Source of the DNA: Dendrobates tinctorius
Lineage: Eukaryota
Direction of reading: 5' to 3'
NCBI RefSeq assembly: GCF_039654945.1
Contig: NW_027361821.1
Location: forward strand, 9,610,001-9,674,000
Length of the DNA: 64,000 bases
The translations under genes were made by a program, and so were the position numbers. The notes beneath the pieces were generated by a model, which did no database searches, had not been told where the DNA came from, and saw only the letters and a program-made list of their open reading frames with translations. Each line of letters opens with the position of its first letter. The stretch's first letter is position 1. Positions 1,061 through 64,000 of this stretch are shown piece after piece.

Positions 1061-1065
1061 CTGTA

Positions 1066-12148: not shown

Positions 12149-15100
12149 TGTTATGAATGGGTCACCGAGGAGGATAGCAAGCCCAGGCTAAGCCACAGAA
12201 AACCAGAGAGGTTGGTAACTAAGCAGATTGCAGACCCCTGATCCTGTCCACACAACTAGCAGTAGCTGTGGAGCGTGCCTACGATGATCCTAGATGCCTC
12301 AGTACAGCTGGAGAGCTAACTAAGCCTAAAGCAAGAAAGGGGAAATCTAAACTGCCCCGGAGCAGACCCCAAAGGAATAGATAGCCCCCAAACATATATT
12401 GTCGGTGAGACAAGATGAATACACAAACGCAGGCAGGAAAATAGACTGAGCAAATGATGGGGCCCACACTGACTAGACAGGACAGGAAAGGAAAGACACT
12501 GCAATCACGCAAAAAAACCTGCAAAAAGTCCAACACGTCTGATGCACAAAAACACTGAAGTCGTAGGACTTCGCCCCCACTATATCAGCACTCTGGTATA
12601 TTCTGAAAGCAAAGCAAAAAAGAGGCCAGTATAACAGGGGACAAAACAGGCACAAGCAGGGCAGTGATTCAGCACAGCTGGCTGACCCGCACAAAGCAGA
12701 GATAGGCAAAACCAGATCAAATGCAAACAGAATAGCAAATGAACCACTTAGCTGAACATTGCAAAAATCACCAGCAGGGATAGAGGCAGTCGGCTGTCTT
12801 AAATCCCAATCTGAAACCCCAGATCTCCAATCGTCATCCTCATTATCAGGTGGCCAGCCTCTGTCAATCAGATCAGCTCCACTACCTCCAGTAACCACCA
12901 GAGGGAGCCCAGAAAGAGAACTCGCAACCCCTCTGTCAATCTGACCAGCTCCACTACCCTTAGCAATAACCAGAGGGAGGCCAGAAAGAGAATTCACAAC
13001 AGTACCCCCCCTTGAGGAGGGGTCACCGAACCCTCATCCACACCACCAGGCCGGTCAGGATGGGCCCGGTGAAAGGCACAAACCAATCTTTCGGCATGAA
13101 TGTCGGAAGCAGACACCCAAGAATTATCCTGGCCATAACCCTTCCATTTGACCAAGTACTGGAGTCTCCGTCTGGCCAAACGAGAATCCAATATTTTCTC
13201 TACCTCATACTCCAAATTACCTTTAACCAATACAGGGTCAGGAGGCGCCGCCATGGGAACTACTGGCTCCACAAACCTCTTCAACAAAGATTTATGAAAC
13301 ACGTTATGAATCTTAAACGTAACTGGAAGAGCCAAACGGAAAGAAACTGGATTAAGGATTTCCAAAATCTTATAAGGTCCAGTGAATCTTGGCTTGAATT
13401 TTGGAGACGCAACCTTCATAGGAATATTCTTTGAAGACAACCAAACCATATCGCCCACTTTAAACCGGGGACCAATGGTCCTACGCCTGTTGGAAAACCG
13501 TTGGGCTTTTTCCTGAGATTGGGACAACTTATCCACCACTTGGTCCCAAATCTGCTGCATTCTCTCTACCACAGAATCCACACTTGGGCAGGCTGAAGAT
13601 TCCACCTGCCCTGAAGAAAATCTATGATGAAACCCAAAATTACAGAAAAAGGGCGACATCAAAGTGGCAGAACTAGCTCTATTGTTTAGCGCGAATTTGG
13701 CCAAGGGCAAAAATGAGACCCAGTCAACCTGATCAGCAGATATGAAACATCTCAAATAGGACTCCAAAGTCTGGTTTGTTCTCTCAGTCTGCCTATTGGT
13801 CTGAGGATGAAATGCAGAGGAGAAAGATAACTGAATTCTCAGTTAGGAACAAAAAGCTCTCCAAAATCTGGAAGCAAACAGGACTCCTCTGTCCGACACA
13901 ATGTTCTCAGGAATCCCGTGCAGCCGAACCATCTGTTGTAAAAACAAGGGCACCAACTCAGAAGAAGATGGCAACTTTGGGAATGGTACAAGATGGACCA
14001 TCTTAGAAAATATATCACAGATCACCCAGATAACAGTCATTCTTTGAGAGTCAGGAAGATTAGAAATAAAATCCATTGAAATATGGGTCCATGGCCTCCT
14101 GGGCACCAGCAGGGGCATCAACAACCCACTAGAACGAGCAAAGGACTTGGACCAAGAACAAGTCCCACAGGACTGCACAAAATTCCTGACATCACGAGAT
14201 AAGGCAGGCCACCAAAAAGATCGACTCACCAAATCTCTGGTACCAAAAACACCTGGATGACCAGCCAACGCAGAGCAATGAATTTCAGACATTACCCTTT
14301 TCCTCCACTGGTCAGGGACATACAATTTTCCCATAGGGCACCGTTCAGGTTTGTCCTCCTGAATCTCCTCCAGGGCATGTCTCAAATCGGGTTAGATGGC
14401 AGAAAGAACTACACCCTCATTTAGAATGGTAGTAGGCTCGGTCACATCAAGAGAATCTGCAAAGAAACTCCTAGAAAGGGCATCCACCTTAACATTCTTA
14501 GTGCCCGGAAGAAAAGAGACCACAAAATTAAAACGTGTGAAAAACTAGGCCCACCTAGCCTGTCTAGGATTCAAGCGTTTGGCTGATTCAAGATAAATCA
14601 AATTCTTGTGGTCGGTGAGGACCACAACTTGATGTCTAGCTCCCTCCAACCAATGTCTCCACTCTTCAAATGCCCATTTCATGGCCAACAATTCCCGATT
14701 TCCCACGTCATAGTTACGTTTCGATGGGGAGAATTTTCGAGAAAAGAAGGCACAGGGATTCATCTTAGAAGTCACCGGATCTCTTTGGGATAAAACGGCT
14801 CCTGCACCAATCTCAGAAGCATCTACCTCCACCTGAAATGGGAGTGAGACATCAGGTTGCCGTAGAACCAGAGCCGAAGTGAATCTCCGCTTAAGCTCCT
14901 GAAATGCCGAAACTGCCTCTGGAGACCAATTCACCACATCAGCGCCCTTTTTGGTCAAATCAGTCAGTGGTTTAACAATACCAGAAAAATTACTTATAAA
15001 TTTACGGTAGAAATTAGCAAAACCCAAAAACTTCTGGAGAGCCTTCAAAGAAGTGGGCTGAACCCAATCATAAATGGCCTGTATCTTGGCCGGGTCCATT

Positions 15101-17878
15101 TCAATAGTAGACGGGGACAAAATGAATCCCAAAAATGAAATCCTCTGTACACCAAAGAGGCATTTTGATCCCTTAACATACAGAGATTTTTCCCTCAAAA
15201 TCCGGAACACAGTCCGGACATGTTCCACATGAGAATCCCAATCACTGGAAAAGATCAAAATATCATCCAGATAAATGATCAAAAACTTATCCACAAAATC
15301 CCGGAAAATATTGTTCGTAAAAGATTGGAAGACAGAAGGGGCATTAATGAGCCCAAAAGGCATCACCAGGTACTCAAAATGTCCCTCCGGAGTGTTAAAC
15401 GCCGTCTTCCATTTATCCCCGTGCTTGATGCGAATAAGATTATACGCCCCCCTGAGGTCAAGCTTGGTAAACCAACAGGCACTTTTAACTCGGGAAAATA
15501 AATCAGAAATCAGGGGTAACAGGTACTGATATTTAACATTGATTTTGTTAAGGGAACGATAGTCAATACATGGCCTTAATGAAGCATCTTTCTTGGCCAC
15601 AAAAAACCCCCAGCACCTAAAGGTGAAGAAGATGGTCTAATATGACCCTTCTCCAAGGACTCCTTGATATAAGATCGCATAGCATCATGTTCAGGTACAG
15701 ATAAGTTGAAAAGCCAACCCTTGGGAAATTTACACCCGGGCATTAACTCAATTGTACAGTCATAACTTCTATGAGGAGGCAAAGACACAGACTTACTCAC
15801 TAAATACATCAGAAAAATCAGCCAAATAGTCGGGAATATCATGAGACTGGGGAGAGGTGGAGAAAACACGAGTGTCGCTAAGAACACATTGACAACCCCA
15901 ACTCACCACAGACACAGATTTCCAATCCAAAACTGGATTATGAGTTTGCAACCAAGGAAAACTCAGAACATTGGTATCATGCAAATTGTGCAACACCAAA
16001 AATTTACAATTTTCTTGGTGGTCCGGGGCGACCCGCATTATCACCTGGGTCCAAAACTGGGGTTTATTCTCCGCCAAAGAAGTAGCATCAATACCCCTCA
16101 AAGGGATAGGAGTCCACAGGGGTATCAATGGAAAACCACAATGTTTGCAAAGTCCAAATCCTTCAGATTCAAAGCTGCTCCTGAATCAACACAAGCCTTA
16201 GCGGAAGATGTAGACAAGGAGCAGATCAGGGTAATCACCAAAAGGAACTTAGGCTGTACACTGCCCACCGCAGATGTGTGAGCAAAACGCTTTTCTCATT
16301 TAGGGCAGACATAAATAGTATGAGAGGCGTCCCCACAGAAAAAACACAACTTACTGCGCCTTCTAAACTCCTGACATTGCGCCCTAGACAAAATCCTATC
16401 GCATTGCATGGTTTCAGAAGTTCGTTCAAAAGGCGGCAACACCTCTCGTGTAATTTTACGTTCACGTAAACGCCGATCAATTTGAATGGCCAATGACATA
16501 GAGTCATCAAGACCAGAGGGAACAGGAAATCCCACCATAACATCTTTTATGGTTTTTGCCAAGCCCTTCTGAAAGAGAGCTGCTAGGGCATCGTCATTCC
16601 ATGTAGTAAGGACCGCCCACTTTTGGAATTTTTGACAATATAACTCTGCAGAATCCTCACCCTCGTTCAATGCCAATAAGGTTTTCTCAGCTTGATCAAT
16701 AGCATTAGGTTCATCATACAATAACCCCAAGGCCTGAAAAATCGAGTCCACATTAGCCAGAATAGGAACTCCGGGTGTCAAAGAAAAGGCCCAATCCTGG
16801 GGATTGCCGCGCAGTGGGGAGATGACAATTTTAACTTGCTGCACAGAGCTCCCCGATGAGTTAGGTTTTAGAGCAAAAAATAGTTTGCAATTATTCTGAA
16901 AAATTCAAAAATTTAGATCGATCCCCAGAAAACACATCAGGAGTAGGGATTTTTGGTTCAACAACAGATGATTGAGCAAGATAGGCAGAAATTCCCCGCA
17001 CTTCACCAGCGAGCTGCTCAACACGATCAGACAATTGCTTAGTCTCCATTTATACAAAAAATATCCTCTTACAGCCCCAGAGAAAAAAAAGAGGAAAAAA
17101 TATAAAAAAAAATTGACACTTTTAAAAAAAAAATTCTTTCCTTCTTTATAGTACCCTAGAGTCTACAGTAAGGCTGGTGATTCTGTTATAAATGGGTCAC
17201 CGAGGAGGATAGCAGGCCCAGGCTAAGCCACAGAAAGCCAGAGAGGTTGGTAACTAAGCGGATTGCAGAACCCTGATCCTGTCCACACAACTAGCAGTAG
17301 CTGTGGAGCGTACCTACGATGATCCTAGATGCCTCGGCACTGCCGGAGAGCTAGCTAAGCCTAAAGCAAGAAAGGGGAAATCTAACCTGCCTCGGAGCAG
17401 ACCCCAAAGGAATAGATAGCCCCCAAACATATATTGTCAGTGAGACAAGATGAAAACACAAATGCAGGCAGGAAAATGGACTGAGCAAATGATGGGGCCC
17501 ACACTGACTAGACAGGACAGGAAAGACACTGTCTGCAATCACGCAAAAAACCCTGCAAAAAGTCCAACACGTCTGATGCACAAAAACACTGAAGTTGCAC
17601 GACTTCGCCCCCACATATCAGCACTCTGGTATAGTCTGAAAGCAAAGCAAAAAAGAGGCCAATATAACAGGGAACAAAACAAACTGGCACAAGCAGTAAC
17701 ATAAGGGCAGTGATTCAGCACAGCCCCAGCCGGAGCTGGCTGATCCGCACAAAGCAGAGATAGACAAAACCAGATCAAATGCAAACAGAATAGCAAATGA
17801 ACCACTTAGCTGAACATTGCAGGGACAGAGCAGGAGACATCAGACTTCAGGAGGCACAGGAAGAAAATCACCAGCAGG
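12149..17878 (-). mobile_element. Gypsy chromovirus (Tf1/sushi-type) element A, degraded; 3' LTR 12149-13001, truncated 5' LTR 17184-17878
   Basis: TG...CA LTR, G-rich PPT next to 13001; gag with CFFCGDASHTIYVC knuckle, RT (YLDD), RNase H, integrase, chromodomain (YEVEKILDSR...YLVKWKGY) over several frameshifted ORFs. Confidence 0.97.
12994..17047 (-). pseudogene. gag-pol of element A with multiple stops and frameshifts
   Basis: ORFs 16296-16844, 15793-16128, 15576-15887, 14545-15600, 13843-14385, 12994-13767. Confidence 0.93.
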
Positions 17879-23110: not shown

Positions 23111-23129
23111 ATTTCATTAAGGGGGGGGG

Positions 23130-26898: not shown

Positions 26899-27699
26899 TA
26901 ACAGTGTTTCCAAATAAAATGCATTTTTCAGAGCAATATTTTAAAATATTTATCATAAAATTTTACAAGATTTTATACCTTTCCAAAAGGGATTCTAGAC
27001 TATGCTAATGCAGATCCTGATTGTGTCAGTTCAGATATTAAAGGGTTTTGTCTTGCTTAATCAAACTCTTTTTATAAGGATGGAGGACACAATGCAAAAT
27101 TGTACCTGCTTTGGAGGTAGAAATGGCCCCCCTTACCTCTTGGGACCCTTTAACAGCACCTTTATATATGGAAGCTGCGCTTACATTAACTCTTTATGGA
27201 CACCATAACTTTTTTATTTTTCAGTCAGCACAGCAGTTTTTGCTGGGCAAGTTGTAGTTTTGAAGGTTTGAATAACTCCATTAACTTTTCCATTCAATAT
27301 ACAATACAACAGAAAAAAAATTCCAAATGGGATGAAATAGTGAAAAATGCTGTGGCTTATTGGTTTGTTTTTTTTACATTTTCCTCTGGCTTTTTTTATA
27401 TGGTAAAAATGACGCTGAATCATGATTCTCTAGGTCGGTAAGATTACGGCGATGCTAAACCTGCTTAGGTTCTTTTATGTAGAGTAATGTTTTGGTTTGT
27501 GTCGCAATTTTCTGAAATCCATAGCACTTTTTTTTTTCAATTAATTGAACTTTGTAACAGGTCTTTTTTGTATGGTGAGATGACAGTCCTATTGATATCC
27601 AGTTGAGTTGGATACCATAGTGTTGTAGTATATAATTAAAATTACGGTTTCTTATAAAGCTCTGATTGCAGCTAAGATTTATAGGAGCACAACATGGCA

Positions 27700-28406
27700 G
27701 CCGATGGATAGTACGGGTTGACACTGTTGTACCCTCGGACTGCAGGGCAGCTTGAACTTGTTTGGATGTTAGTCGAGGTTCTTTATCCAACATCCGCACA
27801 ATCTTGTGCTGAAATCTCTTGTCAATTTTTCGTTTCCGTCCACATCTAGGGAGGTTAGCCACAGTGCCATGGGCTTTAAACTTCTTGATGACACTGCGCA
27901 CGGTAGACACAGGAACATTCAGGTCTTTGGAGATGGACTTGTAGCCTTGAGATTGCTCATGCTTCCTCACAATTTGGTTTCTCAAGTCCTCAGACAGTTC
28001 TTTGGTCTTCTTTCTTTTCTCCATGCTCAATGTGGTACACACAAGGACACAGGACAGAGGTTGAGTCAACTTTAATCCATGTCAACTGGCTGCAAGTGTG
28101 ATTTAGTTATTGCCAACACCTGTTAGGTGCCACAGGTAAGTTACAGGTGCTGTTAATTACACAAATTAGAGAAGCATCACATGATTTTTCAAACAGTGCA
28201 AATACTTTTGTCCACCCTCTTTTTCATGTTTGGTGTGGAATTATATCCAATTTGGCTTTAGGACAATTCTTTTTGTGTTTTTTCATTTAAGACAAATTAA
28301 ATGAAGATAATAATTCCAAAGAATTTGTGTTTGCAATCATTTTCAGGAAGAAATTGAGTATTATCTGACAGAATTGAAGGGGTGTCAATACTTTTGGCCA
28401 CAACTG
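27700..28406 (-). mobile_element. Tc1-like transposon 5' half (TIR plus N-terminal DNA-binding domain)
   Basis: MEKRKKTKELSEDLRNQIVRKH...GRKRKI...TVSTRTI in ORF 27455-28069; terminus CAGTTGTGGCCAAAAGTATTG preceded by TA on the minus strand. Confidence 0.9.
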
Positions 28407-28815: not shown

Positions 28816-29744
28816 GCACCTTATATTATAGCTGCAAAGTGAATAATAACCATCAGGGACCCCGAACCATCGGCCACGGAGCCAGAGGGGATTTAGCAGA
28901 GTAGTTTGGGGTGACATGTAAGACTTTTTTTATCGCTTTTTATTCTGCTGTTTGTGAGGTAGGATGTAGATAGAGACAGCAATTCTGCTAATATTTTCTA
29001 TTATGTGACTGTACGGCCCCTTCACTCAACCGGGTATCATGTTTTTCACAGATGCCACGTGTCTCCTATTTAACCTATGGTGCTGCCCTCATGTCGTGTT
29101 TTCCCAGCAGCACAGATGACAAGGGCCAATTCAAGTCTATGGGTCCATGTAAACATGCCATCCGTGTGCCGTTCGTGTTTAGCATTGAAAGTATGTGAGA
29201 GGCTTTGTAATTTCATTTCCAGTATCCATACTGGATGGCACATGGACGGGACACTGATCAAAAACACTGGTGATACCGATATCTGAGTAACACGTACGTG
29301 TTTTATATGGACATGTGAAGGAAGCCTAACAGTGTTGTTGGTGGGGCAAGTTTGATGTGCTGCTTCATTGTTGGTGCTGGGTGATCCCAGCATATTCTCA
29401 ACATACTTTGAGCTAATTTTGTGTATTTGCATTACTGAGTAGATGCTAAGAATATGCTGACATAGCTTGTAGGCAAATTTGATTTCCAATTCTTAAAACT
29501 AGGAAAGGTGAAATTCCTATTTCTTTGGGAAGTATACATTTTGTTCAGTAAAGTTGGTTTTATATAATATTTATTTTTATCTAGTAAATAATTATTTTTT
29601 GTTATTGCACTTTAATGGGTATTCCCATATTTCCAGGATGTGCCACAATAGTAGATGTGGTTCTGACAAATGGATCAGGCATCTGTTTTGCTGTTAGTGG
29701 AGAGATGGTCAGAATTTTGTCTACCTCACCACTTACATCACTGC

Positions 29745-30262
29745 TTCCCAGTGAGCCCGGCTGCGGAGGGATTTGCGGCTTCCGCCAGGCCAAGCGACAC
29801 CTCTGCCCGCATCCCCAAGCCACCCAGCCCGGCGGCGCCACGTCCTGTGTCGCCGGTGCAGAACCCACCTGTGGCCGTCCCTGCCACATTCCACCTTGAG
29901 GCGGCGGCCTATCCACCGAAGCCTGCTGCCACTCCGGCCCCATCTGCGACTCCGGTTGTGGGGTGCCCCGCAGCCGTGTCTACTTCACTCCCGGAGTCGG
30001 CTGCGGCCTGCTTGTCAGGCTCTGCGGCCTACCCACCGGGACCCTTGACTGCTCCTGCCCGTCGCCCGGCCCTAGCGGCTGCTGGACCGCTGGAATCTGT
30101 GGCCGCCCCTGCCCCGCTCTCGACCCCATCCGCGTCCCGCCCACCGGACACCACGGCCTACACCGGACCCTCCGTATGGGTTGCGGAGGTCATAGAGAAG
30201 AAGAAGGCCCGAGAGCGGGAGATCTGGAGCCTGCTCCATGAAAAAGGAGAGGCTGGCATGGC
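29745..30262 (+). pseudogene. Pro/Ala-rich 5' part of a cold-shock-domain ORF in an LTR-associated element (continues at 36063)
   Basis: GC-rich open frame within ORF 29670-30284 ending VIEKKKAREREIWSLLHEKGEAGM, cut by Gypsy B at CATGGC. Confidence 0.6.
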
Positions 30263-33200
30263 TGTTATGATTGAGTCACCGTAGGAGGCAAAAACAGAAA
30301 TGCTAGCTAAGTCCAGAAAACCAGAGAGGTTGGCAGCTATCAGATTGCAGACCCCTGATCCTATCCACAACAACTAACAGTAGCCGTGGGGGGTTCCTAC
30401 GATGCCCTAGACCCCTCGATCACAGCCGGAGAATTAAATAGGCCTAAAGAAAGAAAGGGGAAATCTAAACTGCCCCAGAGCAGACCCCAAAGCAATAGGC
30501 AGCCCCCAACATATAATGACGGTGAAGCAAGATGAAAACACTAACACAGACAGAAAGAAAGACTGAGCAAAGACGGGGCCCAAGCTAACTAGATAGGAAA
30601 GGACAGGAAGGCTGCTGTCTGCAATCCGTGAAAAACCCTATGAAAATAAGTGCCAACAGACTGACAGTGAAAAAGGCCCTGAAGACGCTAGGCTTCAAAA
30701 AAGCTATGTCAGTACTCAGGAATATTCTGAAGACAGAGCAACAGGCAAAAGGAGATTCAGCTCACCCCAGCAGGGAATGGCAGAATCCAGAAAAGCAAGG
30801 AAAACAAAACACAAATGCTAACAGGCAAAGCAGAAAACTTAGCTTTAGAGGAGCAGGAATCAGACTGGTGTCCTAGAAGTCCACAGAGAAATCACCCGCA
30901 GGGCAGAAGGGCGTCGGCAGCCTTATATCCAGTCCGTGACTCCACTCAGCCAGTCATCCTCATTAGGCTCAGGTGCCTGATAATCAGGCTCACTACCTTC
31001 CTTTACCAGAATAGGGAGTTCACCAGACCTCAGTGACGAAGGGGAAAATGAACTCACAACAGTACCTACCCCTTGAGGAGGGGTCACCGAACCCTTAACC
31101 ACGCCACCAGGGCGATCAGGGTGAGCCCGATGAAAGGCACGCACCAATCTTTTGGCATGAATATCACAGGCAGAGACCCAGGAATTATCCTCCTGACCAT
31201 AACCCTTCCACTTAACCAAATACTGGAGTCTCCGTCTAGCCAAATGGGAATCCAGTATTTTCTCTACCTCATATTCCATGTTACCTTCAACCAATACAGG
31301 GTCTGGAGGTGCCACCCCAGGAACAACTGGTTCAACAAACCTCTTCAACAAGGACTTATGGAACACATTATGGATTTTAAATGTGACAGGAAGAGCCAAA
31401 CGAAAAGAGACCGGATTAATAATCTCCAAAATCTTGTAAGGTCCAATAAATCTAGGCTTAAACTTAGGATAAGCCACCTTCATAGCAATATTTTTTGAAG
31501 ATAACCACACCATATCACCAATCTTAAACTGGGGACCAATGGTCCTATGTCGATTGGAAAACCGCTGGGCCTTTTCCTGGGAGAGAGATAACTTATCCAC
31601 CACTTGGTCCCAGATCTGGTTCATTCTCTCCACCACAGTGTCAACACCTGGGCAGGCAGAAGGCTCCATCTGCCCTGAAAAAAATCGAGGATGAAACCCA
31701 AAGTTACAAAAAAAAGGTGACATCAAAGTGGCAGAACTAGCTCTATTATTTAAAGCAAATTCGGCCAAGGGCAAAAATGAAACCCAATCATCCTGATCAG
31801 CGGAAATAAAACATCTCAAATACGACTCCAAGGTCTGGTTTGTTCTCCCTGTCTGCCCATTGGTCTGAGGGTGAAAAGCAGAGGAGAAGGACAACTGAAT
31901 TCCCAGCTTGGAACAGAAAGTCCTCCAAAATCTAGACACAAACTGAACTCCTCTGTCAGATACAATGCTCTCAGGAATCCCGTGTAAGCGAACCACCTGT
32001 TGCAAAAACAGGGGCACCAACTCAGAGGAAGATGGCAACTTAGGGAGTGGTACAAGATGAACCATCTTAGAGAACCTATCACAAATCACCCAAATAACAG
32101 TCATTCTTTGAGAGACCGGCATATCAGAGATGAAATCCATTGAAATATGGGTCCATGGCCTCCTGGGGACCGGCAAAGGCATCAACAACCCACTAGAGCG
32201 AGAACAAGATTTAGACCGGGAGCAAGTCCCACAGGACTACACAAAATTCCTGACATCATGAGACAAGGTGGGCCACCAAAAAGAGCGACTCACCAGATCT
32301 CTAGTACCAAAAATACCTGGATGACCAGCCAATGCAGAGCAATGAACTTCAGACATCACTCTCTTCTTCCACTGGTCAGGAACATACAACTTTCCACTGG
32401 GACAACGCTCAGGTTTGTCCTCCTGGAACTCTTGCAGAGCAAGTCTCAAATCGGGTGAGATGGCAGAAAGAACTACCCCTTCGCCTAAGATGGTAGCAGG
32501 CTTGGTCACCACAGGAGAATCAGCAAAGAAACTCCTAGAGAGGGCATCTGCCTTGACATTCTTAGTTCCAGGAAGAAAAGAGACCACAAAATCAAAACGT
32601 GTAAAAAACAAGGCCCACCTAGCCTGTCTAGGGTTCAAGCGTTTAGCCGACTCTAGGTAAATCAAATTCTTGTGGTCAGTGAGGACCACAACTTGATGTT
32701 TAGCTCCCTCCAACCAATGTCTCCACTCCTCAAATGCCCATTTCATGGCCAACAGTTCCCGACTCCCCACATCATAGTTACGTTCAGATGGAGAGAACTT
32801 TCGGGAAAAGAAAGCACAGGGATTCATTTTAGATGTTACAGGATCCCTTTGGGACAAAACAGCTCCTGCACCAATCTCTGAAGCATCCACCTCTACCTGG
32901 AACGGGAGTGAGACATCAGGTTGCTGCAAAACTGGGGCGGAGGTAAATCTTCGCTTCAGCTCCTGAAAGGAAGCAACAGCCTCCGGAGACCAATTCAACA
33001 CATCAGCACCCTTCTTAGTCAGATCAGTCAATGGCTTGGCAATACTAGAAAATTTTGCTATAAATTTCCGATAAAAATTAGCAAAACCCAAAAACTTCTG
33101 GAGGGCCTTCAAAGAAGTGGTCTGAACCCAATCATAAATGGCCTGTACCTTGGCCGGGTCCATTTCAATAGTTGACGGAGGCAAAATAAATGCCAAAAAT

Positions 33201-36056
33201 GAAATCCTCTGTACTCCAAAAAGGCATTTCGATCCTTTGACATACAGGGAATTCTCCCTCAAGATCCGGAACACAGTCCGAATATGTTCCACATGAGAAT
33301 CCCAATCCTTGGAGAAGATCAAAATATCATCCAGATAGATAATCAAAAATTTATCGACAAAGTCTCGGAAAATATCGTTCATGAAGCACTGGAAGACAGA
33401 AGGGGCATTAGTGAGCCCAAAAGGCATCACCAGGTACTCAAAATGTCCCTCCGGAGTATTAAACGCCGTCTTCAATTCATCCCCCTGCTTAATGCGGATA
33501 AGATTATACGCCCCCCTGAGGTCAAGCTTGGTAAACCAGCAAGCACCTCTAACTCTAGAGAATAGATCCGAAATCAGGGGTAACGGATACTGATATTTAA
33601 TAGTAATTTTATTGAGGGCACGATAATCAATACAAGGCCTTAAAGAACCATCCTTTTTGGCCACAAAAAAAAACCCGGCACCTAAGCGTGAAGAGGATGG
33701 TCTAATATGACCCTTCTCCAACACCTCCTTAATATAGGACCGCATAGCCTCATGCTCGGGTACAGATAAATTGAAGAGCCGACCCTTGGAAAATTTACAC
33801 CCCGGGCTTAGTTCGATTGCACAGTCATAACTCCTATGAGGAGGCAAGGACGCAGACTCATTCTCACTAAATACATCATAAAAGTCCGCCAAATAGTCAG
33901 GAACATCATGCGACTGAGGAGAGGTGGAAAAAACCGGAGCCTCACTAAAGGCACACCGACAACCCCAACTCACCACAGACACAGATTTCCAATTTCCAAT
34001 CCAAAACTGGATTATGAATTTGCAACCAGGGAAACCCCAGAACAACGGCATCATGCAGACCATGCAACACCAAAAATCTGCAATTTTCTTGATGGTCTGG
34101 GGCGACCCGCATTACCACCTGGGTGCAAAACTGAGGTTTATTTTTCGCCAAAGGAGTAGCATCAATCCCCCTCAAAGGGATAGGCGTCTGCAGAGGTGTC
34201 ATCGGAAATCCACAACGTTTAGCAAAATCCAAGTCCATTAGGTTTAGCGCTGCTCCCGAATCCACAAAGGCCTTGGCGGAAAATATGGACAGGGAGCAGA
34301 TCAGAGTAATTGCCAGAAGAAACTTAGGTTGAACACCACCAACAGAAAACGTGTGTGCAAAGCGTTTCTCTCGTTTAGGACAAACAGAAATAATATGCGA
34401 GGCATCTCCACAGAAAAAACACAGCTTATTACGCCTTCTGAACTCCTGACGTTGCGCCTTAGACAAAACTCTATCACATTGCATAGGTTCAGACGTCTGT
34501 TCAACCGGTGGCAACACCTCTCGTGCAATCCTGCGTTCACGTAAACGCCGATCAACCTGAATGGCTAATGACATAGAATCGTCCAGACCAGAGGGAACAG
34601 GAAATCCCACCATAGTATCTTTTACGGCTTCTGACAAACCCTTCCGAAAGAGAGCAGCCAAGGCATTATCATTCCAGGTAGTAAGGACCGCCCACTTTCG
34701 GAACTTTTGACAGTACAACTCTGCAGAATCTCGACCCTGGTTCAATGCCAACAGGGTCTTTTCAGCCTGATCAATAGCATTAGGTTCGTCATACAACAAC
34801 CCCAAAGCTTGAAAGAATGCGTTCACATTAGTCAGAATAGGATCATCTGGTTTCAAAGAAAACGCCTAATCCTGGGGATCGCCACGCAGCAAAGAGATGA
34901 CAATTTTAACCTGCTGCGTGGAGCTCCCTGACGAGTTAGGCTTCAAGGCAAAAAATAATTTACAATTATTTTTGAAACTCAAAAATTTAGATCGATCCCC
35001 AAAAAATACATCAGGTGTAGTGATCTTTGGTTCAACAGCATGCGAACGAGCAAGGTAGGCGGAAATTCCCCTCACTTCCGCAGCGAGCTGCTCCACACGA
35101 TCAGACAATTGCTTTATCTCCATTGAGAGAAAAAAAAATTCCCCCTACGGCCTCAGAGATATAGAGGAAAGAATATACACACACTTTTTTTTTTTTTTTA
35201 AACACAATTCTTTCCTGCTATTGAGTACCCTAGGATCTGCGGTATGGCGGGTGATTCTGTTATGATTGAGTCACCGTAGGAGGCAAAAACAGAAATGCTA
35301 GCTAAGTCCAGAAAACCAGAGAGGTTGGCAGCTCTCGGATTGCAGACCCCTGATCCTATCCACAACAACTAACAGTAGCCGTGGGGGGTTCCTACGATGC
35401 CCTAGACCCCTCGATCACAGCCAGAGAATTAAATAGGCCTAAAGAAAGAAAGGGGAAATCTAAACTGCCCCAGAGCAGACCCCAAAGCAATAGGCAGCCC
35501 CCAACATATAATGACGGTGAAGCAAGATGAAAACACTAACACAGACAGAAAGAAAGACTGAGCAAAGACGGGGCCCAAGCTAACTAGATAGGAAAGGACA
35601 GGAAGGCTGCTGTCTGCAATCCGTGAAAAACCCTATGAAAATAAGTGCCAACAGACTGACAGTGAAAAGGGCCCTGAAGACGCTAGGCTTCAAAAAAGCT
35701 ATGTCAGTACTCAGGAATATTCTGAAGACAGAGCAACAGGCAAAAGGAGATTCAGCTCACCCCAGCAGGGAATGGCAGAATCCAGAAAAGCAAGGAAAAC
35801 AAAACACAAATGCTAACAGGCAAAGCAGAAAACTTAGCTTTAGAGGAGCAGGAATCAGACTGGTGTCCTAGAAGTCCACAGAGAAATCACCCGCAGGGCA
35901 GAAGGGCGTCGGCAGCCTTATATCCAGTCCGTGACTCCACTCAGCCAGTCATCCTCAATAGGCTCAGGTGCCTGATAATCAGGCTCACTACCTTCCTTTA
36001 CCAGAATAGGGAGTTCACCAGACCTCAGTGACGAAGGGGAAAATGAACTCACAACA
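30263..36056 (-). mobile_element. Full-length young Gypsy chromovirus (Tf1/sushi-type) element B; 799-bp LTRs 30263-31061 and 35258-36056
   Basis: TG...CA LTRs differing by about 5 substitutions by eye; CATGGC on both flanks; gag CCHC, FVDSGA protease, RT YLDD, RNase H, integrase, chromodomain. Confidence 0.98.
30923..35123 (-). pseudogene. Single-frame gag-pol of element B with few lesions
   Basis: ORFs 34866-35123, 33945-34856, 32237-34063, 30923-32188; two in-frame TAG stops and a 7-bp duplication ATTTCCA at 33985-33998. Confidence 0.93.
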
Positions 36057-36062
36057 CATGGC

Positions 36063-36265
36063 GGCTCGTGTATACCAACCTGGAGAAGGGATATGGGTTC
36101 ATTCGAGACCTCGAAACCGGCCAAAAGGTATATCTTAACGTGACTTCCATCCGTCACGGCCGGGCTTTGCGGGAGGGGGACTTGGTGTCATACTATAGAG
36201 TACTGTCTCTGCGGCTATTATGCGGTAGCCGTGATCGTCGAACCCGAAGGCCACGTGCCACCGTA
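36063..36265 (+). pseudogene. Cold-shock (OB-fold) domain-like coding segment
   Basis: LVYTNLEKGYGFIRDLETGQKVYLNVTSIRHGRALREGDLVSYYRVLSL then, after a frameshift near 36212, GYYAVAVIV; KGYGFI equals the RNP-1 motif. Confidence 0.7.
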
Positions 36266-42473: not shown

Positions 42474-42619
42474 AACAACATGGGAAGGGAAGCAAAAGAC
42501 CAGAAAAAGCCATACACCTGACAAATGCTATTGAGAGCTCTGCTATTAGAAGTGAAAAGGAAGAACAAAGACAAAATAATCTAATTAATAAAAATATTGG
42601 AGAAAGAGAAACCAATCAC

Positions 42620-45099
42620 AAACTAAAATGTTTCTATACTAATGCACAAAGCATGGGCAACAAATAAGGAGAATTGGAACTACTAACACAGGAAAAGAAA
42701 TATGATGTCATTGGAATCACTGAAACTTGGTGGGACAATACACATGATTGGAATACAAGACTAGAAGGATACAACTTATTTGCAAGAAACAGACTTGATA
42801 AGCGAGGAGGAGGTGTCGCATTGTATGTTAGAAACGCGTATATCTGCACAGAGATTGAAGCTTCAGAGACTGGGAGTTCTGTGGAAACTGTTTGGGTAAG
42901 AATACAAGGGAGGAAATGGTTGAGGAGGTAAAAGTGGCTGGGAGCCTAGGAGGTAGCGACCATGCTATTTTAGAATTTTGGATAACTAGAGGCGGAAGAC
43001 CTGTGAAGACTCAGACGTCAAGGTTAGATTTCAGAAAGGCAGATTTTAAGGGATTCAGAAAGAGAATTGGAGGGATCAAATGGCTGGATATCCTTAAAGA
43101 CAAAAATGTCCAGGAAGGATGGGAAATCTTGAAAAATGAAATTCTCAAAGCACAGTTGTTAACAATTCCGAAAAGAGGGAAGAATAGGAAGCATTTAAGG
43201 AAACCAGGATGGATGAACACAGAACTTAAGCACATGCTAAAAAGGAAGAAAAATATGTTTATAAAATGGAAAGAGGGAGGCATATCTAAAGAAGAATATA
43301 ATGCTGTCTGCAGAACCTGCAGGGCACAAATCAGATTAGCTAAAGCTGAAAATGAATTGAGGCTTGCAAGAGATGTCAAAAGCAATAAAAAAGGATTTTG
43401 GGGATATGTCAAAAGTAAAAGAAAAGTCAAAGATGCTATAGGATTTTTACAGGATGAAAATGATGAAATGGTAAGACAGGATGTTGAGAAGGCCGAACTT
43501 TTAAATTCCTATTTTGCATCTGTTTTCTCTCAGAAAGGAAATGTAACATCAACTGTTCTTCACTGTCCTATTAAGGGAATAGAAGAATCCAGGATATCTA
43601 TAAACAGAAAGATAGTGAGGAAACACTTAGCTAACCTAAATGAATTCAAGTCTCCAGGTCCAGATGAATTACACCCCAGAGTACTGAAGGAGATAGCAGA
43701 AGAAATTTTTGAACCCCTCTCCATAATCTTTGAAAATTCTTGGAGAACAGGAGAAGTGCCAGAAGACTGGAGAAGAGCAAATGTTGTTCCTATCTTCAAA
43801 AAGGGGAAGAAGGTGGACCCAGGCAACTATAGGCCGGTGAGTCTGACTTCTATACCAGGAAAGATCTTTGAACAAATTATTAAACAACATGTATGTCAGT
43901 ACCTGGATAAGAATGAAGTGATTAAACAGAGTCAGCATGCGTTTGTAACTAATAAGTCATGTCAGACTAACTTAATTTCCTTCTATGACGGAATCACTGA
44001 TTGGGTGGATCAAGGAAATGCTGTAGATATAGTATATCTTGACTTCAGCAAAGCATTTGACAAAGTCTCTCATACAATCCTTATTGAAAAAATGACTAAG
44101 TATGGAATGGACAAGGCAACTGTTAGGTGGATTCATAACTGGCTTAGTGATCGGACCCAAAGAGTGGTCGTAAATGGCTGCACATCCAGTTGGAAGAATG
44201 TCTCAAGTGGGGTACCACAGGGCTCTGTCCTGGGCCCTGTATTGTTCAACATCTTTATCAACGATTTAGATGAAGGAATTGAGGGTAAACTGATTAAATT
44301 TGCTGATGACACAAAGCTAGGAGGGATAGCTAATACTAGAGAAGAGAGAGAGAGGATTCAAAAAGATATAAATAAACTGGAGAAGTGGGCAGCAACTAAC
44401 AGAATGGTTTTTAACAGGGAGAAATACAAAGTACTACATCTGGGCAATAAAAATGAAAAAAGCATATACAGAATGGGAGGAATAGGGCTAAGTGACAGCA
44501 CATGTGAAAAAGACTTGGGTATACTAATAGATCACAGACTGAATATGAGTCAACAGTGTGATGCAGCAGCAAAAAAGGCAAATGCAATTCTAGGATGTAT
44601 TAACAGAAGCATACAGTCTAGATCACGTGAAGTCATTATTTCCCTCTACTCCTCTTTGGTCAGACCTCATCTGGAATATTGTGTCCAGTTTTGGGCACCA
44701 CATTTTAAAAAAGACATCAACAAACTGGAGCAAGTTCAGAAAAGAGCGACCAGAATGGTGACCGGTCTGCAAACCCTGTCTTATGAGGAAAGGCTGCAGG
44801 ATTTGGGAATGTTTAGTTTGCAAAAGAGAAGACTGAGAGGAGACTTAATAGCTGTCTACAAATATCTAAAGGGCTGTCACATTGTAGAAGGATCAACTTT
44901 ATTCTCATTTGCACAAGGAAAGACTAGAAGCAATGGGATGAAACTGAATGGGAGGAGACACAGATTAGATATTAGAAAAAACTTTTTGACAGTTAGAGTG
45001 ATCAATGAGTGGAACAGGCTGCCACGAGAAGTGGTGAGTTCTCCTTCAATGGAAGTCTTCAAACAGAGGCTGGACAGACATCTGACTGGGATGATTTAG
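42620..45099 (+). pseudogene. CR1 ORF2 (APE endonuclease disrupted, RT open)
   Basis: CFYTNAQSMGNK* (TAA 42665), GITETWW, jump from VWVRIQG to EEMVEEVKV...SDH; RT motifs YLDFSKAFD, GVPQGSVLGP, FADD in ORF 42892-45099. Confidence 0.93.
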
Positions 45100-53362: not shown

Positions 53363-54951
53363 CACTGCTCAAAAAAATAAAGGGAACACTAAGATACCAC
53401 ATTGTAGATATTACTGAATGAAATGTCACAGCTTCAAATCTTTATTTTTTACATAGTGGCATGCGTTGAGAACAAGAATACATAAAAATGATCAATGTAA
53501 AGCAAAATTAATATCCCATGGAGGTCTGGATTTGGAAGGATACTCAAAATCAAAGTGGAAAATCAAATTACAGGCTGATCCAACTTCAGTGGAAATGCCT
53601 CAAGACAAGGAAATGATGCTCAGCAGTGTGTGTGTGACCTCCACGTGCCTGTTTGACCTCCCTATGACACCTGGGCATGCTTCTGATGAGTCGGCGGATG
53701 TTGTCATGAGGACTCTCCTCCCAGACCTGGACTAAATCATCCGCCAACTCCTGGACAGTCTGTGGTGCAACGTGACGTTGGTAAATGGAGCGAGACATGA
53801 TGTCCCAGATGTGCTCAATCGGATTCAGGTCTGGGGAACGAGCGGGTCAGTCAATAGCTTCAATGCCTTCATCTTGCAGGAACTGCTGACACACTCCAGC
53901 CACATGAGGTCTGGCATTGTCCTGCATTTGAAAGAACCCAGGAGCAACCACACCAGCATATGGTCTCACAAGGGGTCTGAGGATCTCATCTCGGTACCTA
54001 ATGGCAGTCAGGCTATCTCTGGTGAGCACATGGAGGGCTGTGCGGCCCTCCAAAGAAATGCCACCGCACACCATTACTGACCCACTGCCAAACCGGTCAT
54101 GCTGAAGTCATGCTGAAGGATGTTGCAGGCAGCAGATTGCTCACCACGGCTTCTCCAGACTCTGTCACGTCTGTCACATGTGCTCAGTGTGAACCTGCTT
54201 TCATCTGTGAAGAGCACGGGGCAAAGTGGTGAATTTGCCAATCCTGGTGTTCTGTGGCAAATGCCAAGCGTCCTGCATGGTGTTGGGCTGTGAGCACAAC
54301 CCCCATCTGTGGACATCGGGCACTCAGACCATCCTCATGGAGTCGGTTTCTAACCATTTGTGTAGATACATGCACATTTTTGGCCTGCTGGAGGTCATTT
54401 TGCAGGGCTCTGACAGTGCTCCTCCTGTTCCTCTTTGCACAAAGGCTGAGGTAGCGGTCCTGCTGCTGGGATGTTGCCCTCCTACGGCCCCCTCCACATC
54501 TCCTGGTGTACTGGCCTGTCTCCTGGTAGCGCCTCCAGCCTCTGGACACTACGCTGACAGACACATCAAACCTTCTTGCCACAGCTCGCATTGATGTGCC
54601 ATCCTGGATGAGCTGCACTACTTGAGCCACTTGTGTGGGTTGTAGAGCCGGTCTCATGTTACCACGAGTGTGAAAGCACAACCAACATTCAAAAGTGAAG
54701 AAAACATCAGCCAGAAAGCATTGGTACTGAGATGTGGTCTGTGGTCCCCACCTGCAGATCCACTCCTTTATTGAGTGTGTCTTGATAATTGCCAATAATT
54801 TCCATCTGTTGTCTATTCCATTTGCACAACAGCATGTGAAATTGATTGTCAATCAGTGTTGCTTCCTAAGTGGACAGTTTGAATTCACAGAAGTTTGATT
54901 TACTTGGAGTTATATTCTGTTGTTTGTGTTCCCTTTATTTTTTGAGCAGTG
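53363..54951 (-). mobile_element. Full-length Tc1-like transposon, frameshifted (family of 6278-7701)
   Basis: TIR CACTGCTCAAAAAA(A)TAAAGGGAACAC at both ends with TA TSD; FTDESRF and QDNARPH motifs in ORFs 54074-54316 and 53847-54074. Confidence 0.95.
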
Positions 54952-55089: not shown

Positions 55090-55162
55090 TTCACAAATGA
55101 TAATTGAGTGCAAAATTATTCCTATTCCTATATATAATAAATATGTATGTGTGTGTATTGTA

Positions 55163-56770
55163 CAGTGGGGCAAAAAAGTATTTAGTCAGTCAGCAATAGT
55201 GCAAGTTCCACCACTTAAAAAGATGAGAGGCGTCTGTAATTTACATCACAGGTAGAACTCAACTATGGGAGACAAACTGAGAAAAAAAAAATCCAGAAAA
55301 TCACATTGTCTGTTTTTTTTTTCATTTTATTTGCATATTATGGTGGAAAATAAGTATTTGGTCAGAAACAAGCAATCAAGATTTCTGGCTCTCACAGACC
55401 TGTAACTTCTTCTTTAAGAGTCTCCTCTTTCCTCCACTCATTACCTGTAATTATGGCACCTGTTTAAACTTGTTATCAGTATAAAAAGACACCTGTGCAC
55501 ACCCTCAAACAGTCTGACTCCAAACTCCACTATGGTGAAGACCAAAGAGCTGTCAAAGGACACCAGAAACAAAATTGTAGCCCTGCACCAGGCTGGGAAG
55601 ACTGAATCTGCAATAGCCAACCAGCTTGGAGTGAAGAAATCAACTGTGGGAGCAATAATTAGAAAATGGAAGACATACAAGACCACTGATAATCTCCCTC
55701 GATCTGGTGCTCCACGCAAAATCCCACCCCGTGGGGTCAGAATGATCACAAGAACGGTGAGCAAAAATCCCAGAACCACGCGGGGGGACCTAGTGAATGA
55801 ACTGCAGAGAGCTGGGACCAATGTAACAAGGCCTACCATAAGTAACACACTACGCCACCATGGACTCAGATCCTGCAGTGCCAGACGTGTCCCACTGCTT
55901 AAGCCTGTACATGTCCGGGCCCGTCTGAAGTTTGCTAGAGAGCATTTGGATGATCCAGAGGAGTTTTGGGAGAATGTCCTATGGTCTGATGAAACCAAAC
56001 TGGAACTGTTTGGTAGAAACACAACTTGTCGTGTTTGGAGGAAAAAGAATAATGAGTTGCATCCATCAAACACCATACCTACTGTAAAGCATGGTGGTGG
56101 AAACATCATGCTTTGGGGCTGTTTCTCTGCAAAGGGGCCAGGACGACTGATCCGGGTACATGAAAGAATGAATGGGGCCATGTATCGTGAGATTTTGAGT
56201 GCAAACCTCCTTCCATCAGCAAGGGCATTGAATATGAAACGTGGCTGGGTCTTTCAACATGACAATGATCCAAAGCACACCGCCAGGGCAACGAAGGAGT
56301 GGCTTCGTAAGAAGCATTTCAAGGTCCTGGAGTGGCCTAGCCAGTCTCCAGATCTCAACCCTATAGAAAACCTTTGGAGGGAGTTGAATGTCCGTGTTGC
56401 CAAGCGAAAAGCCAAAAACATCACTGCTCTAGAGGAGACCTGCATGGAGGAATGGGCCAACATACCAACAACAGTGTGTGGCAACCTTGTGAAGACTTAC
56501 AGAAAACGTTTGACCTCTGTCATTGCCAACAAAGGATATATCACAAAGTATTGAGATGAAATTTTGTTTCTGACCAAATACTTATTTTCCACCATAATAT
56601 GCAAATAAAATGAAAAAAAAACAGACAATGTGATTTTCTGGATTTTTTTTTCTCAGTTTGTCTCCCATAGTTGAGGTCTACCTATGATGTAAATTACAGA
56701 CGCCTCTCATCTTTTTAAGTGGTGGAACTTGCACTATTGCTGACTGACTAAATACTTTTTTGCCCCACTG
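55163..56770 (+). mobile_element. Apparently intact Tc1 transposon (1608 bp, ~209-bp TIRs, TA TSD)
   Basis: CAGTGGGGCAAAAAAGTATTTAGTCAGTC ... GACTGACTAAATACTTTTTTGCCCCACTG; TA on both sides. Confidence 0.98.
55532..56554 (+). CDS. Tc1 DD34E transposase, 340 aa, uninterrupted
   Basis: [25 protein letters not shown] with 34 residues between second D and E; N-terminal paired-like HTH and GAPRK linker. Confidence 0.97.
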
Positions 56771-58649
56771 TATGTGCTGTACATCAGGATATAAAGACCT
56801 CCACACCACTCAAACAAATTTTGACTTAGGACCAAACGTTCTTCTCATTCACCCAGAGAAACTCCTGTATGACACAGATTATGCAACACCCAATTGTGCT
56901 ATATCCTCTCTGCACACGTGGTTGAAAAGATTCCTAAAATATTCCAATATTCCACCTACCTGCAACCTGTTAGTGCCTCCAATAGTGCACATCTGTCACA
57001 TATTTCAAGCTTCGACTTGATTTAACATAATCACAATATTAAAAGTAGAATTAAGAAATTAAGCATATCAAATTTTAGAAACTGCAGCCTGCCTTACAAA
57101 GCCCAATCCATGTCTTCTATTTGGGCATGACTGATTGCTAGGGGCCCCATTTCTTGACTCAATATAAACATTAAAACTGGTGACCCTTGCCCCAGAATCA
57201 GACTAGTTTGCGCAAAATGGCAGTGCATATATAGTTTATGGTTAAAGTGGTATTCCCAGAAATTTGCGCCCAAATTTTAGTGCATTTTTTGGCACATGCT
57301 GCTGGACAATAAACCATTTATCCTTTTGTGTAACGCATGTCACTTTTAAGTGATGCCACATACCACTTGTCAGACAAAAAGCAAAAAGTTTGTATCTATC
57401 CCCTGAACATGTGGGAGGTGCAAACACATGAGATGATATGACTTGTTTGATCCAGTCTTACAATGTTGACTGTTTAATATCTTTTGTCCCTATGTGGTCT
57501 CTTATGTGGATGCATCAGGACTGGCTCACGCATCATAAACTTATGAGAGAGTCCTTAGTATGCAGCATATTATATGTAGTACTCTTTTTGCACTTTGCAG
57601 TCACTTTTTGCATAGCTATTTTCTATAATCTTTTGCACTTTATGGGATATCTATATATAGTGTTTCTTTTTTTTATTATTAATTCAATGAATTTTCTATG
57701 AATTATGGTGTTTGGGCTGGCGGAACGCACCAAATTATAAAATAATAGTAGGTGCGTTCGCAGCCCGGGGTCCACCGTGCAGAGGTGGTACACTGCTGCT
57801 AGGTAGTGGCGGAAGAATAGAGCGGCGTAAAAACAGTTACACGTGGGTTACGTCACCCAATGTGAACAGGTGCGAACTCTGTTAATGCACAGAGTCGCAC
57901 AACCGCTGAACGTAGATGCCGGAGCCTGTTTAGCTCACAGAGCCCGGCCAAAAGAGCGCACAGTGTACGGCCACAGAACTCTACCCCAAGGACACGTGGT
58001 TAGAGTCCTTCTAGGCCCACTGAGCACACGGCATTGCTGCCGCGAGTGCCGCTATAGACGCTGGCTATGAAGTGGAGCGCGTGCACTGAGGCGTGCTGAG
58101 TCCCTGGTGAGGGCTGATGCCTGACTCAACCTCTGTCCTCCCTACACCTAAGCCTGGGTGCTAGCAGGCTAGGCAGCACAACACATGTGTACCAATGGTA
58201 GGGGTTTCTTAATGAGTCATTCACCAGAGACATTCATACGTGCATACATCACTCACTCCACATAGTCTGTAAATACAGTCTTATCCTAGCGCATGGCCGA
58301 GCGGCCATGCGAACCTTTTATAGCCGCGAGCATCCGGAACCTTCCTGGCTTCTTGGATGGGCCAATCCGAACATGAGCAGGACCTGAGCACGTGACCTTC
58401 GATCTCCAATGGGAGATCACTCCACGGGCATGCTCAGTGGCCTGACATGGGGACTTAGTCCCTGGAGAATCTTGCTGCTGAGCAGCATGTATTGTCATAG
58501 ATGTGCCAGAGGTGGCAGCAGCAAGCAAACCCACGGAGCTGGTCTGGGCAGAGTGCCTGGACCGACGAGTTTGCTGAGCAACCTCCTCTGCGGCTGGAGA
58601 GGAATGGGATTCTCGCTATGCAGCGACAGAAATCCGATGCCTAACATTA

Positions 58650-63616: not shown

Positions 63617-64000
63617 TACTAGCCAGACCCTGGCGCTAGGATAATGTTAGGGCTGGCAGAACGCACCAAATTATAAAATAATAGTAGGTGCGTTCGCAGC
63701 CCGGGGTCCACCGTGCAGAGGTGGTACACTGCTGCTAGGTAATGGCGGAAGAATAGAGTGGCGTAAAAACAGTCACACGTGGGTTACGTCACCCAATGTG
63801 AACAGGTGCGAACTCTGCTAATGCACAGAGTCGCACAACCGCTGAATGTAGATGCCGGAGCCTGTTTAGCTCACAGAGCCCGGCCAAAAGAGCGCACAGT
63901 GTACGGCCACAGAACTCTACCCCAAGGACACGGGGTTAGAGTCCTTCTAGGCCCACTGAGCGCGCGGCATCACTGCCGCGAGCGCCGCTATAGACGCTGG

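What the first reader, a model, noticed from the sequence alone, without database searches (positions are those of the whole stretch)
12766..63644. tRNA-independent self-priming signature in all three Gypsy elements, with a compensatory base-pair change
Seen (element-sense): no TGG-type tRNA PBS. Element A PBS AATCACCAGC (17173-17182) is complementary to LTR GCTGGTGATT (12766-12775, 17866-17875); element B PBS AATCACCCGC (35247-35256) to GCGGGTGATT (30890-30899, 35885-35894); an A-U pair in A is a C-G pair in B, and a G-U pair extends both to 11 bp. Divergent element C PBS TTATCCTAGCGC (63633-63644) pairs 12/12 with GCGCTAGGATAA (58281-58292). Each partner starts about 24 nt after a TATA-like box (ATTTAAG, GATATAAG, TATAAAAG), where the transcript should begin. 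Established: S. pombe Tf1 primes reverse transcription with the first 11 nt of its own mRNA, and this was proposed for vertebrate Tf1/sushi elements. The covariation is direct comparative support in this genome.
Basis: partly seen in the sequence, partly recalled or inferred. Interest (0 to 1): 0.78.

Follow-up and report, generated by a model that had tools for sequence, protein, structure and literature searches.

The report
Self-priming Gypsy retrotransposons in a frog
Three Gypsy-type jumping genes in this window lack a tRNA primer site. Instead they carry a 10-12 base site that pairs with the predicted first bases of their own RNA. This is the self-priming trick already known from yeast Tf1 and vertebrate "sushi" elements, so the case is solid but ordinary.

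Summary
All three elements lie on the minus strand and are Ty3/Gypsy chromoviruses. Right after the 5' LTR, with 0-1 spacer bases, sits a site with no TGG. It is perfectly complementary over 10 bases (A, B) or 12 bases (C) to one LTR site. That site starts 22 bases after a TATA-like box, at a T|G step.

Chance is excluded: about 0.1-0.4% of shuffled LTRs reach the match in each element. The A/B difference is compensated on both sides.

I fetched nine more scorable relatives from frogs and fishes. All show the same design with different sequences: 118 of 120 own primer/site positions pair, against 3.8 of 10 in cross-element pairings.

The best reading is Tf1/sushi-type self-primed reverse transcription. 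This is described in the literature as a common feature of that group, vertebrates included, so these are new members of a known kind.

Three things remain untested. The RNA start is inferred, because only assembled contigs were available. Host tRNA fragments could not be checked. RNase H cutting is untested.

One correction: element A's 5' LTR has no U3 and no target-site duplication, and it begins within 3 bases of the predicted RNA start. This is unexplained.

First readers noted the same signature at least 14 times elsewhere in this genome.

The parts
12149..13001 (-). Element A 3' LTR (853 bp, TG..CA). It carries a 42-nt deletion near 12763 relative to A's 5' LTR and to B.
12766..12775 (-). 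Element A predicted self-primer (start of R) in the 3' LTR, GCTGGTGATT. It lies 22 nt after ATTTAAG.
13005..13013 (-). Element A polypurine tract, AAGGGGGGG.
17173..17183 (-). Element A primer-binding site, G+AATCACCAGC, directly after the LTR's terminal CA. No TGG.
17184..17878 (-). Element A 5' LTR, R-U5 only. Homology stops within 3 nt upstream of the self-primer (17866-17875). There is no U3 and no target-site duplication.
30263..31061 (-). Element B 3' LTR (799 bp). Self-primer GCGGGTGATT at 30890-30899; GATATAAG at 30922-30929.
30923..34856 (-). Element B coding region in three pieces: gag-protease (33945-34856), RT-RNase H-integrase zinc finger (32237-34063), and integrase-SH3-chromodomain (30923-32188). 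There is a frame change within 33945-34063 and an in-frame stop at 32237-32239.
31065..31074 (-). Element B polypurine tract, AAGGGGTAGG.
35247..35257 (-). Element B primer-binding site, G+AATCACCCGC.
35258..36056 (-). Element B 5' LTR. Self-primer at 35885-35894; TATA-like box at 35917-35924. The CATGGC target-site duplication lies at 30257-30262 and 36057-36062.
57709..58646 (-). Element C 3' LTR (938 bp), preceded by the polypurine tract AGGAGGGGGGG.
58281..58292 (-). Element C predicted self-primer, GCGCTAGGATAA. It lies 22 nt after TATAAAAG (58315-58322).
63633..63644 (-). Element C primer-binding site, TTATCCTAGCGC. 12/12 complement with no spacer.
63645..64000 (-). Element C 5' LTR, cut by the window end. 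Its own self-primer copy lies outside the window.

Best explanation
A, B and C are Tf1/sushi-type chromoviruses that prime minus-strand DNA synthesis with the first 10-12 bases of their own RNA instead of a tRNA.

Proposed steps:
1. Transcription starts at the G of a T|G step, about 29 nt after a TATA-like box in the 5' LTR. This is inferred.
2. The RNA's 5' end folds back over about 600 nt of R-U5 and pairs with the site that abuts the LTR end. The complementarity is shown, and the long-range helix is predicted for B.
3. The element's RNase H cuts off the paired stretch. Its 3' end, which lies next to the last base of U5, is extended by reverse transcriptase. This is inferred by analogy with Tf1.
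4. The plus strand later copies the primer into the primer-binding site, so a change at the start of R is passed on to that site. This explains the A/B compensated change and the complete turnover of the pair between families.
For: - Domain order and chromodomain integrase.
- No TGG next to any 5' LTR.
- The complement is beyond chance in each element.
- The duplexes are predicted stable, at -16 to -19 kcal/mol.
- B's R-U5-PBS fold pairs nt 1-9 with the site in both the minimum-energy and the centroid structure.
- The primer starts 28-32 nt after an A/T hexamer in 8 of the 9 elements scored for it. The joint background probability of that pattern is about 5e-9.
- 8 of those 9 have T at -1 and G at +1, and pairing never extends upstream of that point.
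- Nine scorable relatives show the same design with different sequences: Ranitomeya (4), Pseudophryne, Labeo, Hemibagrus, Chelmon and one unnamed.
- Over all 12 elements, 118/120 own pairs are Watson-Crick, against 3.8/10 in cross-element pairings.
- Compensated changes occur between close relatives: A/B, A/L005, L001/L011/L009/L012 and L002/L004.
- Literature: the Tf1 mechanism (PMC7175516); self-priming as a common feature of Tf1/sushi elements (PMC10085805, PMC6317226, PMC4600332); the primer copied into cDNA (PMC11042837).
Against: - No RNA 5'-end data. All runs found were assembled contigs, which cannot show a start.
- The two flanking duplexes of the Tf1 'pretzel' structure were not detectable above shuffles.
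- R-U5 is about 585-640 nt, much longer than in Tf1, so the pairing is long-range. B's whole-leader fold is no more stable than shuffles (z = 0.05).
- There is no AATAAA or ATTAAA in the three LTRs.
- The three copies are not intact, so nothing shows they are active now.
- Host tRNAs were not available to exclude internal tRNA fragments.
Confidence: 0.85

Rival explanations
1. A host tRNA fragment, internal or a half-molecule as in copia or Ty5-like elements, is the real primer, and the LTR complement is incidental.
For: No tRNA set of the host could be examined. Half-tRNA priming exists in some Ty1/copia lineages (PMC6317226).
Against: Twelve related elements have 12 different sites, while tRNAs are conserved across vertebrates. 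Each site matches its own LTR at the same promoter-relative place. None begins with TGG.
Confidence: 0.03
2. The 5'-end/PBS pairing is real, but it serves RNA circularisation, packaging or strand transfer, and priming is done some other way.
For: Only complementarity is shown here, not primer use. The long-range helix appears in the fold of B.
Against: The paired site occupies exactly the place where every LTR element needs its minus-strand primer, 0-2 nt from the LTR end. No alternative primer site is present. The primer's 3' end points into U5, as priming requires. In Tf1 this same duplex is the primer (PMC7175516).
Confidence: 0.07
3. The match is chance complementarity in long LTRs.
For: Matches of 10 nt do occur now and then. 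In C, 22 of 4983 internal windows reach 12 nt.
Against: Per-element probability is about 0.1-0.4%. The match recurs in all 9 scorable relatives, at the same distance from a TATA-like box. Compensated changes are present.
Confidence: 0.01

Closest known systems
Tf1 / Tf2 of Schizosaccharomyces pombe (self-priming shown experimentally)
   Same: Chromovirus with a chromodomain integrase and no tRNA primer site. The RNA's first bases pair with a site just after the 5' LTR. Tf1's site begins ATAAC (PMC11042837); the cores here also begin with A. L012 in Ranitomeya is a tandem array sharing a middle LTR, as seen for Tf elements.
   Different: The duplex here is 9-10 bp (12 in C), against 11 in Tf1. 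R-U5 is about 600 nt, so the fold-back is long-range. The flanking 'pretzel' duplexes were not detected. The host is a vertebrate. Cleavage and primer use are untested.
Vertebrate Tf1/sushi group (sushi-ichi of pufferfish and relatives; Butler et al. 2001, J Mol Evol 52:260, cited in PMC6317226, PMC10085805 and PMC4600332)
   Same: Vertebrate chromoviruses predicted to self-prime. The LTR has a short U3 with an A/T box near the 5' part (PMC3601003 on the Sushi LTR model). C's gag resembles PEG10, a mammalian gene with homology to sushi-ichi GAG and POL (PMC10570562). The fish relatives fetched here are labelled 'Tf2 polyprotein' by their sources.
   Different: These are frog families not named in anything I could read. 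The original paper is not held, so I could not compare sequences or its structure drawings. No tree with reference elements was built.
Ty3 of Saccharomyces cerevisiae (tRNA-primed Ty3/Gypsy element)
   Same: Closest solved RT-RNase H structure (7q5b and 4ol8, E about 1e-81 to 1e-85). Same gene order.
   Different: Ty3 uses initiator tRNA-Met (my own knowledge). The elements here have no TGG site.
Plant Tcn1-clade chromoviruses and TAR/Houba copia elements (predicted self-primers)
   Same: Self-priming is predicted from the same kind of LTR/PBS complementarity (PMC6317226).
   Different: Different hosts and, for TAR, a different superfamily.

Membership tests
Tf1/sushi-type self-priming chromovirus | Ty3/Gypsy gene order (gag, protease, RT, RNase H, integrase) with a C-terminal chromodomain | tested here: met
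   Pfam hits RVT_1, RT_RNaseH, Integrase_H2C2, rve, SH3_Tf2-1 and Chromo in A and B. C has gag, protease, rve and SH3_Tf2-1, with no chromodomain hit in its degraded ORFs.
Tf1/sushi-type self-priming chromovirus | No site complementary to a tRNA 3' end (TGG...) next to the 5' LTR | tested here: met
   The first bases after the LTR are GAATCACC (A, B) and TTATCCTA (C). No TGG lies within 19 nt.
Tf1/sushi-type self-priming chromovirus | The site just after the 5' LTR is complementary to a sequence inside the LTR | tested here: met
   Complement of 10, 10 and 12 nt; 0-7 of 2000 shuffles reach it. All 9 scorable relatives show the same.
Tf1/sushi-type self-priming chromovirus | The complementary LTR sequence is the very 5' end of the transcript | tested here: inconclusive
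   Supported indirectly by a TATA-like box at -28 to -32, a T|G step, and a sharp upstream end of pairing. No reads showing RNA ends were available.
Tf1/sushi-type self-priming chromovirus | Three-duplex 'pretzel' RNA structure around the primer/PBS duplex (PMC10085805) | tested here: inconclusive
   The central duplex is predicted in B. Flanking duplexes score no better than shuffles in a crude duplex-energy test on 9 elements.
Tf1/sushi-type self-priming chromovirus | RNase H cut after the paired stretch, and use of that stretch as primer | not testable with these tools
   Needs biochemistry or cDNA end mapping.
Tf1/sushi-type self-priming chromovirus | Phylogenetic placement inside the Tf1/sushi clade | not tested
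   Only indirect evidence: the SH3_Tf2-1 domain, source names 'Transposon Tf2-6/Tf2-9 polyprotein' for fish relatives, and the PEG10 match of C's gag. No reference sequences were available for a tree.

The most novel reading that the evidence does not exclude
Element A's 5' LTR is not randomly truncated. It begins at the element's RNA start: homology ends within 3 nt of the self-primer, with no U3 and no target-site duplication. On this reading it is a fossil of a non-canonical cDNA or an integrase-independent insertion of a self-priming element, comparable to the LTR-truncated, duplication-free insertions described for HIV-1 lacking integrase activity and the truncations proposed for Tf1 (PMC11042837). 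If such copies recur genome-wide, they would map the transcript start without any RNA data.
Probability: 0.12. Interest if true: 0.5.

Novelty: new member of a known kind. Interest (0 to 1): 0.28.

Why it matters
This confirms that abundant, recently active frog chromoviruses use tRNA-independent self-priming. B's LTRs are 99.4% identical, and thousands of related contig pieces occur in the DNA runs.

It also gives a clean comparative data set: 12 elements and 12 different primer/site pairs. The set shows a conserved 9-10 bp core, a fixed distance from the TATA-like box, and a primer-binding site that co-varies with the start of R.

The practical value is for annotation. LTR-finding tools that demand a tRNA primer site will mis-score these families.

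It does not change what is known about the mechanism.

Tried and rejected
- RNA evidence for the start site. The look-up of sequencing runs returned no run on record as RNA, and only contigs. Read laying therefore gave no molecule ends.
- Family variation from those contigs. The A-type T at site position 35249 is the majority: 57-76% of depth in the three runs of organism A and 80% in the run of organism B. The matching primer position 35892 was not among the rows shown, and the two sites cannot be linked in contigs.
- Pretzel flanking duplexes. No signal.
- Was the extra 42 nt in A's 5' LTR an insertion? Rejected: it aligns with B, so A's 3' LTR carries a deletion.
- LINE-mediated retrocopy of a read-through transcript as the origin of A's U3-less LTR. 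There is no poly(A) and no convincing duplication downstream; only a 13/14-nt similarity at about 11676-11689, inside repeat-like DNA.
- A diverged U3 upstream of A's 5' LTR. No LTR start motif within 800 nt, and no second copy of A's U3 anywhere in the window.
- Ustilago (L007) and Closterium (L006) loci. LTR ends are unclear, so they were left out of the counts.
- L010 (Ranitomeya). Its primer-binding site is partly deleted, so it was left out.
- tRNA genes. None in the window or in the first eight fetched loci (L001-L008), and no Rfam match in the window.
- Original papers. The Levin and Lin & Levin papers I looked up, and the Esnault & Levin review, are not held. Butler et al. 2001 (J Mol Evol) is known to me only through citing papers.
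Full report
**Observation**

Repeat finding and pairwise alignment give the anatomy:

- Element A: 3' LTR 12149-13001 (853 bp); 5' LTR 17184-17878.
- Element B: LTRs 30263-31061 and 35258-36056 (795 of 800 aligned bases identical), flanked by a 6-bp duplication CATGGC.
- Element C: 3' LTR 57709-58646; a 5' LTR that starts at 63645 and runs off the window.

All LTRs begin TG and end CA. Polypurine tracts precede the 3' LTRs. Pfam finds gag, protease, RT, RNase H, integrase, a Tf2-type SH3 domain and, in A and B, a chromodomain. These are therefore Ty3/Gypsy chromoviruses.

None of the three copies is intact:
- B has one frame change (33945-34063) and one in-frame stop (32237-32239).
- A and C are more broken.

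**The primer site**

In element sense the base after the LTR's terminal CA is G, followed by AATCACCAGC in A and AATCACCCGC in B. In C the site TTATCCTAGCGC follows CA directly. None contains TGG.

- The reverse complements occur once in each LTR, at LTR position 227 (A), 163 (B) and 355 (C).
- In each case the partner lies 22 nt after ATTTAAG, GATATAAG or TATAAAAG.
- Shuffled LTRs reach the observed length in 7, 3 and 0 of 2000 trials.
- Of all internal 14-nt windows, 2/4168, 6/4181 and 22/4983 reach it.
- The A/B difference is U-A in A and G-C in B at the same pair.
- The extra G.U pair in A and B exists. Relatives do not keep it, so I give it no weight.

The partner in A's 5' LTR (17866-17875) is orthologous to the one in the 3' LTR. 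What looked like a 42-nt insertion beside it is the ancestral state, because it aligns with B. The 3' LTR carries the deletion.

A's 5' LTR has no U3:
- Homology to A's 3' LTR and to B stops within 3 nt upstream of the partner.
- The DNA beyond is AT-rich and unrelated.
- There is no LTR start motif within 800 nt and no target-site duplication.
- There is no second copy of A's U3 in the window.

**Comparative test**

A protein search with B's RT placed the closest relatives in the poison frog Ranitomeya imitator, at 65-82% identity. Fish relatives were about 52-57% identical, some labelled 'Transposon Tf2 polyprotein' by their sources. The host is therefore probably an anuran.

I fetched 12 loci and delimited LTR pairs. 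Nine elements could be scored, and every one has the same design with its own sequence:

| Locus | Organism | Primer |
|---|---|---|
| L001 | Ranitomeya | GGCTTCCTGT |
| L011 | Ranitomeya | GGCTTCCAGT |
| L009 | Ranitomeya | GCCACCTGT |
| L012 | Ranitomeya | GCTCCTTGT |
| L005 | Pseudophryne | GCTGCTGAAT |
| L002 | Labeo | GTCAGATCGT |
| L004 | Chelmon | GCCAGATCGT |
| L003 | Hemibagrus | TTTGGTTATT |
| L008 | unnamed | GCGAAGTATT |

Each primer matches a site 1-2 nt after its own 5' LTR.

Over the 12 elements:
- 118 of 120 positions are Watson-Crick with the element's own site, against a mean of 3.8 of 10 when primers are paired with other elements' sites.
- Both exceptions are the outermost pair in L009 and L012.
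- All ten columns show two or more pair types.
- Close relatives differ by compensated changes: A/B one; A/L005 two; L001/L011 one; L001/L009 two; L001/L012 two; L002/L004 one.

Among the 9 elements scored for promoter context:
- 8 have an A/T hexamer starting 29-32 nt upstream of the primer. The joint background probability of that pattern is about 5e-9.
- 8 have T at -1 and G at +1.

Loci left out of the counts were L006 and L007 (unclear LTR ends) and L010 (primer site partly deleted).

**Mechanism**

Shown here:
- The complementarity.
- Its position at the exact place a minus-strand primer must bind.
- Its geometry: the primer's 3' end faces U5.
- Its promoter-relative position.
- Its co-variation.

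Predicted: the 5' end of B's RNA pairs with the site across 637 nt in both the minimum-energy and the centroid fold. The leader as a whole is no more stable than shuffles.

Inferred from Tf1:
- The first 11 bases pair with the primer-binding site.
- RNase H cuts between bases 11 and 12.
- The released oligonucleotide primes synthesis (PMC7175516).

In Tf1 about half of the cDNA carries the primer-binding site as single-stranded DNA copied from the primer (PMC11042837). It follows that a change at the start of R that reaches both LTRs will be written into the site within a replication cycle or two. I therefore read the covariation as a footprint of primer copying rather than as two independent selected mutations. 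It also explains why a self-primed site, freed from a conserved tRNA, drifts to a different sequence in every family.

**What could not be shown**

- No run on record as RNA and no raw reads were offered, so contigs gave no molecule ends.
- The contigs do show that the LTR family is very abundant, and that the A-type T at 35249 is the majority state in both coded organisms.
- No tRNA genes were at hand.
- The two flanking duplexes of the Tf1 'pretzel' (PMC10085805) were not detectable by a crude energy test.
- None of the three LTRs has AATAAA or ATTAAA.

**Comparison with what is known**

- It is said to have been described in elements 'from yeast and vertebrates' (PMC6317226).
- It is 'implicated ... 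from fungi to vertebrates' (PMC4600332).
- All three cite Butler et al. 2001.

The finding is therefore a well-supported new member of a known kind. First readers of this scan noted the same signature at least 14 times elsewhere in this genome. Those notes are unchecked, and I could not test them.

**Verdict**

Confidence in self-priming is 0.85. Interest is modest at 0.28. The only unexplained item is A's U3-less 5' LTR beginning at the predicted RNA start.

Noticed in passing
window 17184-17878 and upstream to 18700: Element A's 5' LTR lacks U3. It begins within 3 nt of the predicted self-primer/RNA start, with no target-site duplication. A random truncation would land there about 0.5% of the time.
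   Followed up: partly
L012:5803-16745 (Ranitomeya imitator): A tandem array LTR-internal-LTR-internal-LTR of a self-priming element, flanked by a single CCAGGG duplication. Tandem Tf1/Tf2 elements sharing one LTR are described as products of an integrase-independent pathway (PMC11042837).
   Followed up: no
L010:8025-8050 (Ranitomeya imitator): A young copy (LTRs 99.4% identical) whose primer-binding site has lost about 8 bases. The site is expendable once the copy is inserted.
   Followed up: no
window 29670-30262 and 36063-36499, + strand: Element B sits inside plus-strand ORF-bearing DNA. The ORF downstream of the insertion has a weak cold-shock domain match (Pfam CSD, E = 1.4e-4, below the family cut-off). 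Another first-reader note (s1-376876) covers this.
   Followed up: partly
window 41430-45099, + strand: A non-LTR retrotransposon: an ORF with GDSL-lipase/OSK-like similarity, followed by a 735-aa reverse transcriptase ORF.
   Followed up: no
window 27455-28069 (-), 54184-54852 (-), 55532-56554 (+): Tc1/mariner (Sleeping Beauty-like) transposase remnants. The last has HTH and DDE_3 domains in a 340-aa ORF.
   Followed up: no
window 1-1084 and 9886-10935: Tandem repeat arrays: about 26 copies of a 41-nt unit at the window start, and 92-nt and 70/138-nt units near 10 kb.
   Followed up: no
window LTRs of A, B and C: No AATAAA or ATTAAA anywhere in the three LTRs, so the poly(A) signal and the R/U5 border are unknown. 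The fish relative L002 has AATAAA about 50 nt before its LTR end.
   Followed up: partly
window 57709-58292 (-): R-U5 of element C folds much better than shuffles (z = -5.3). B's leader does not (z = 0.05).
   Followed up: no
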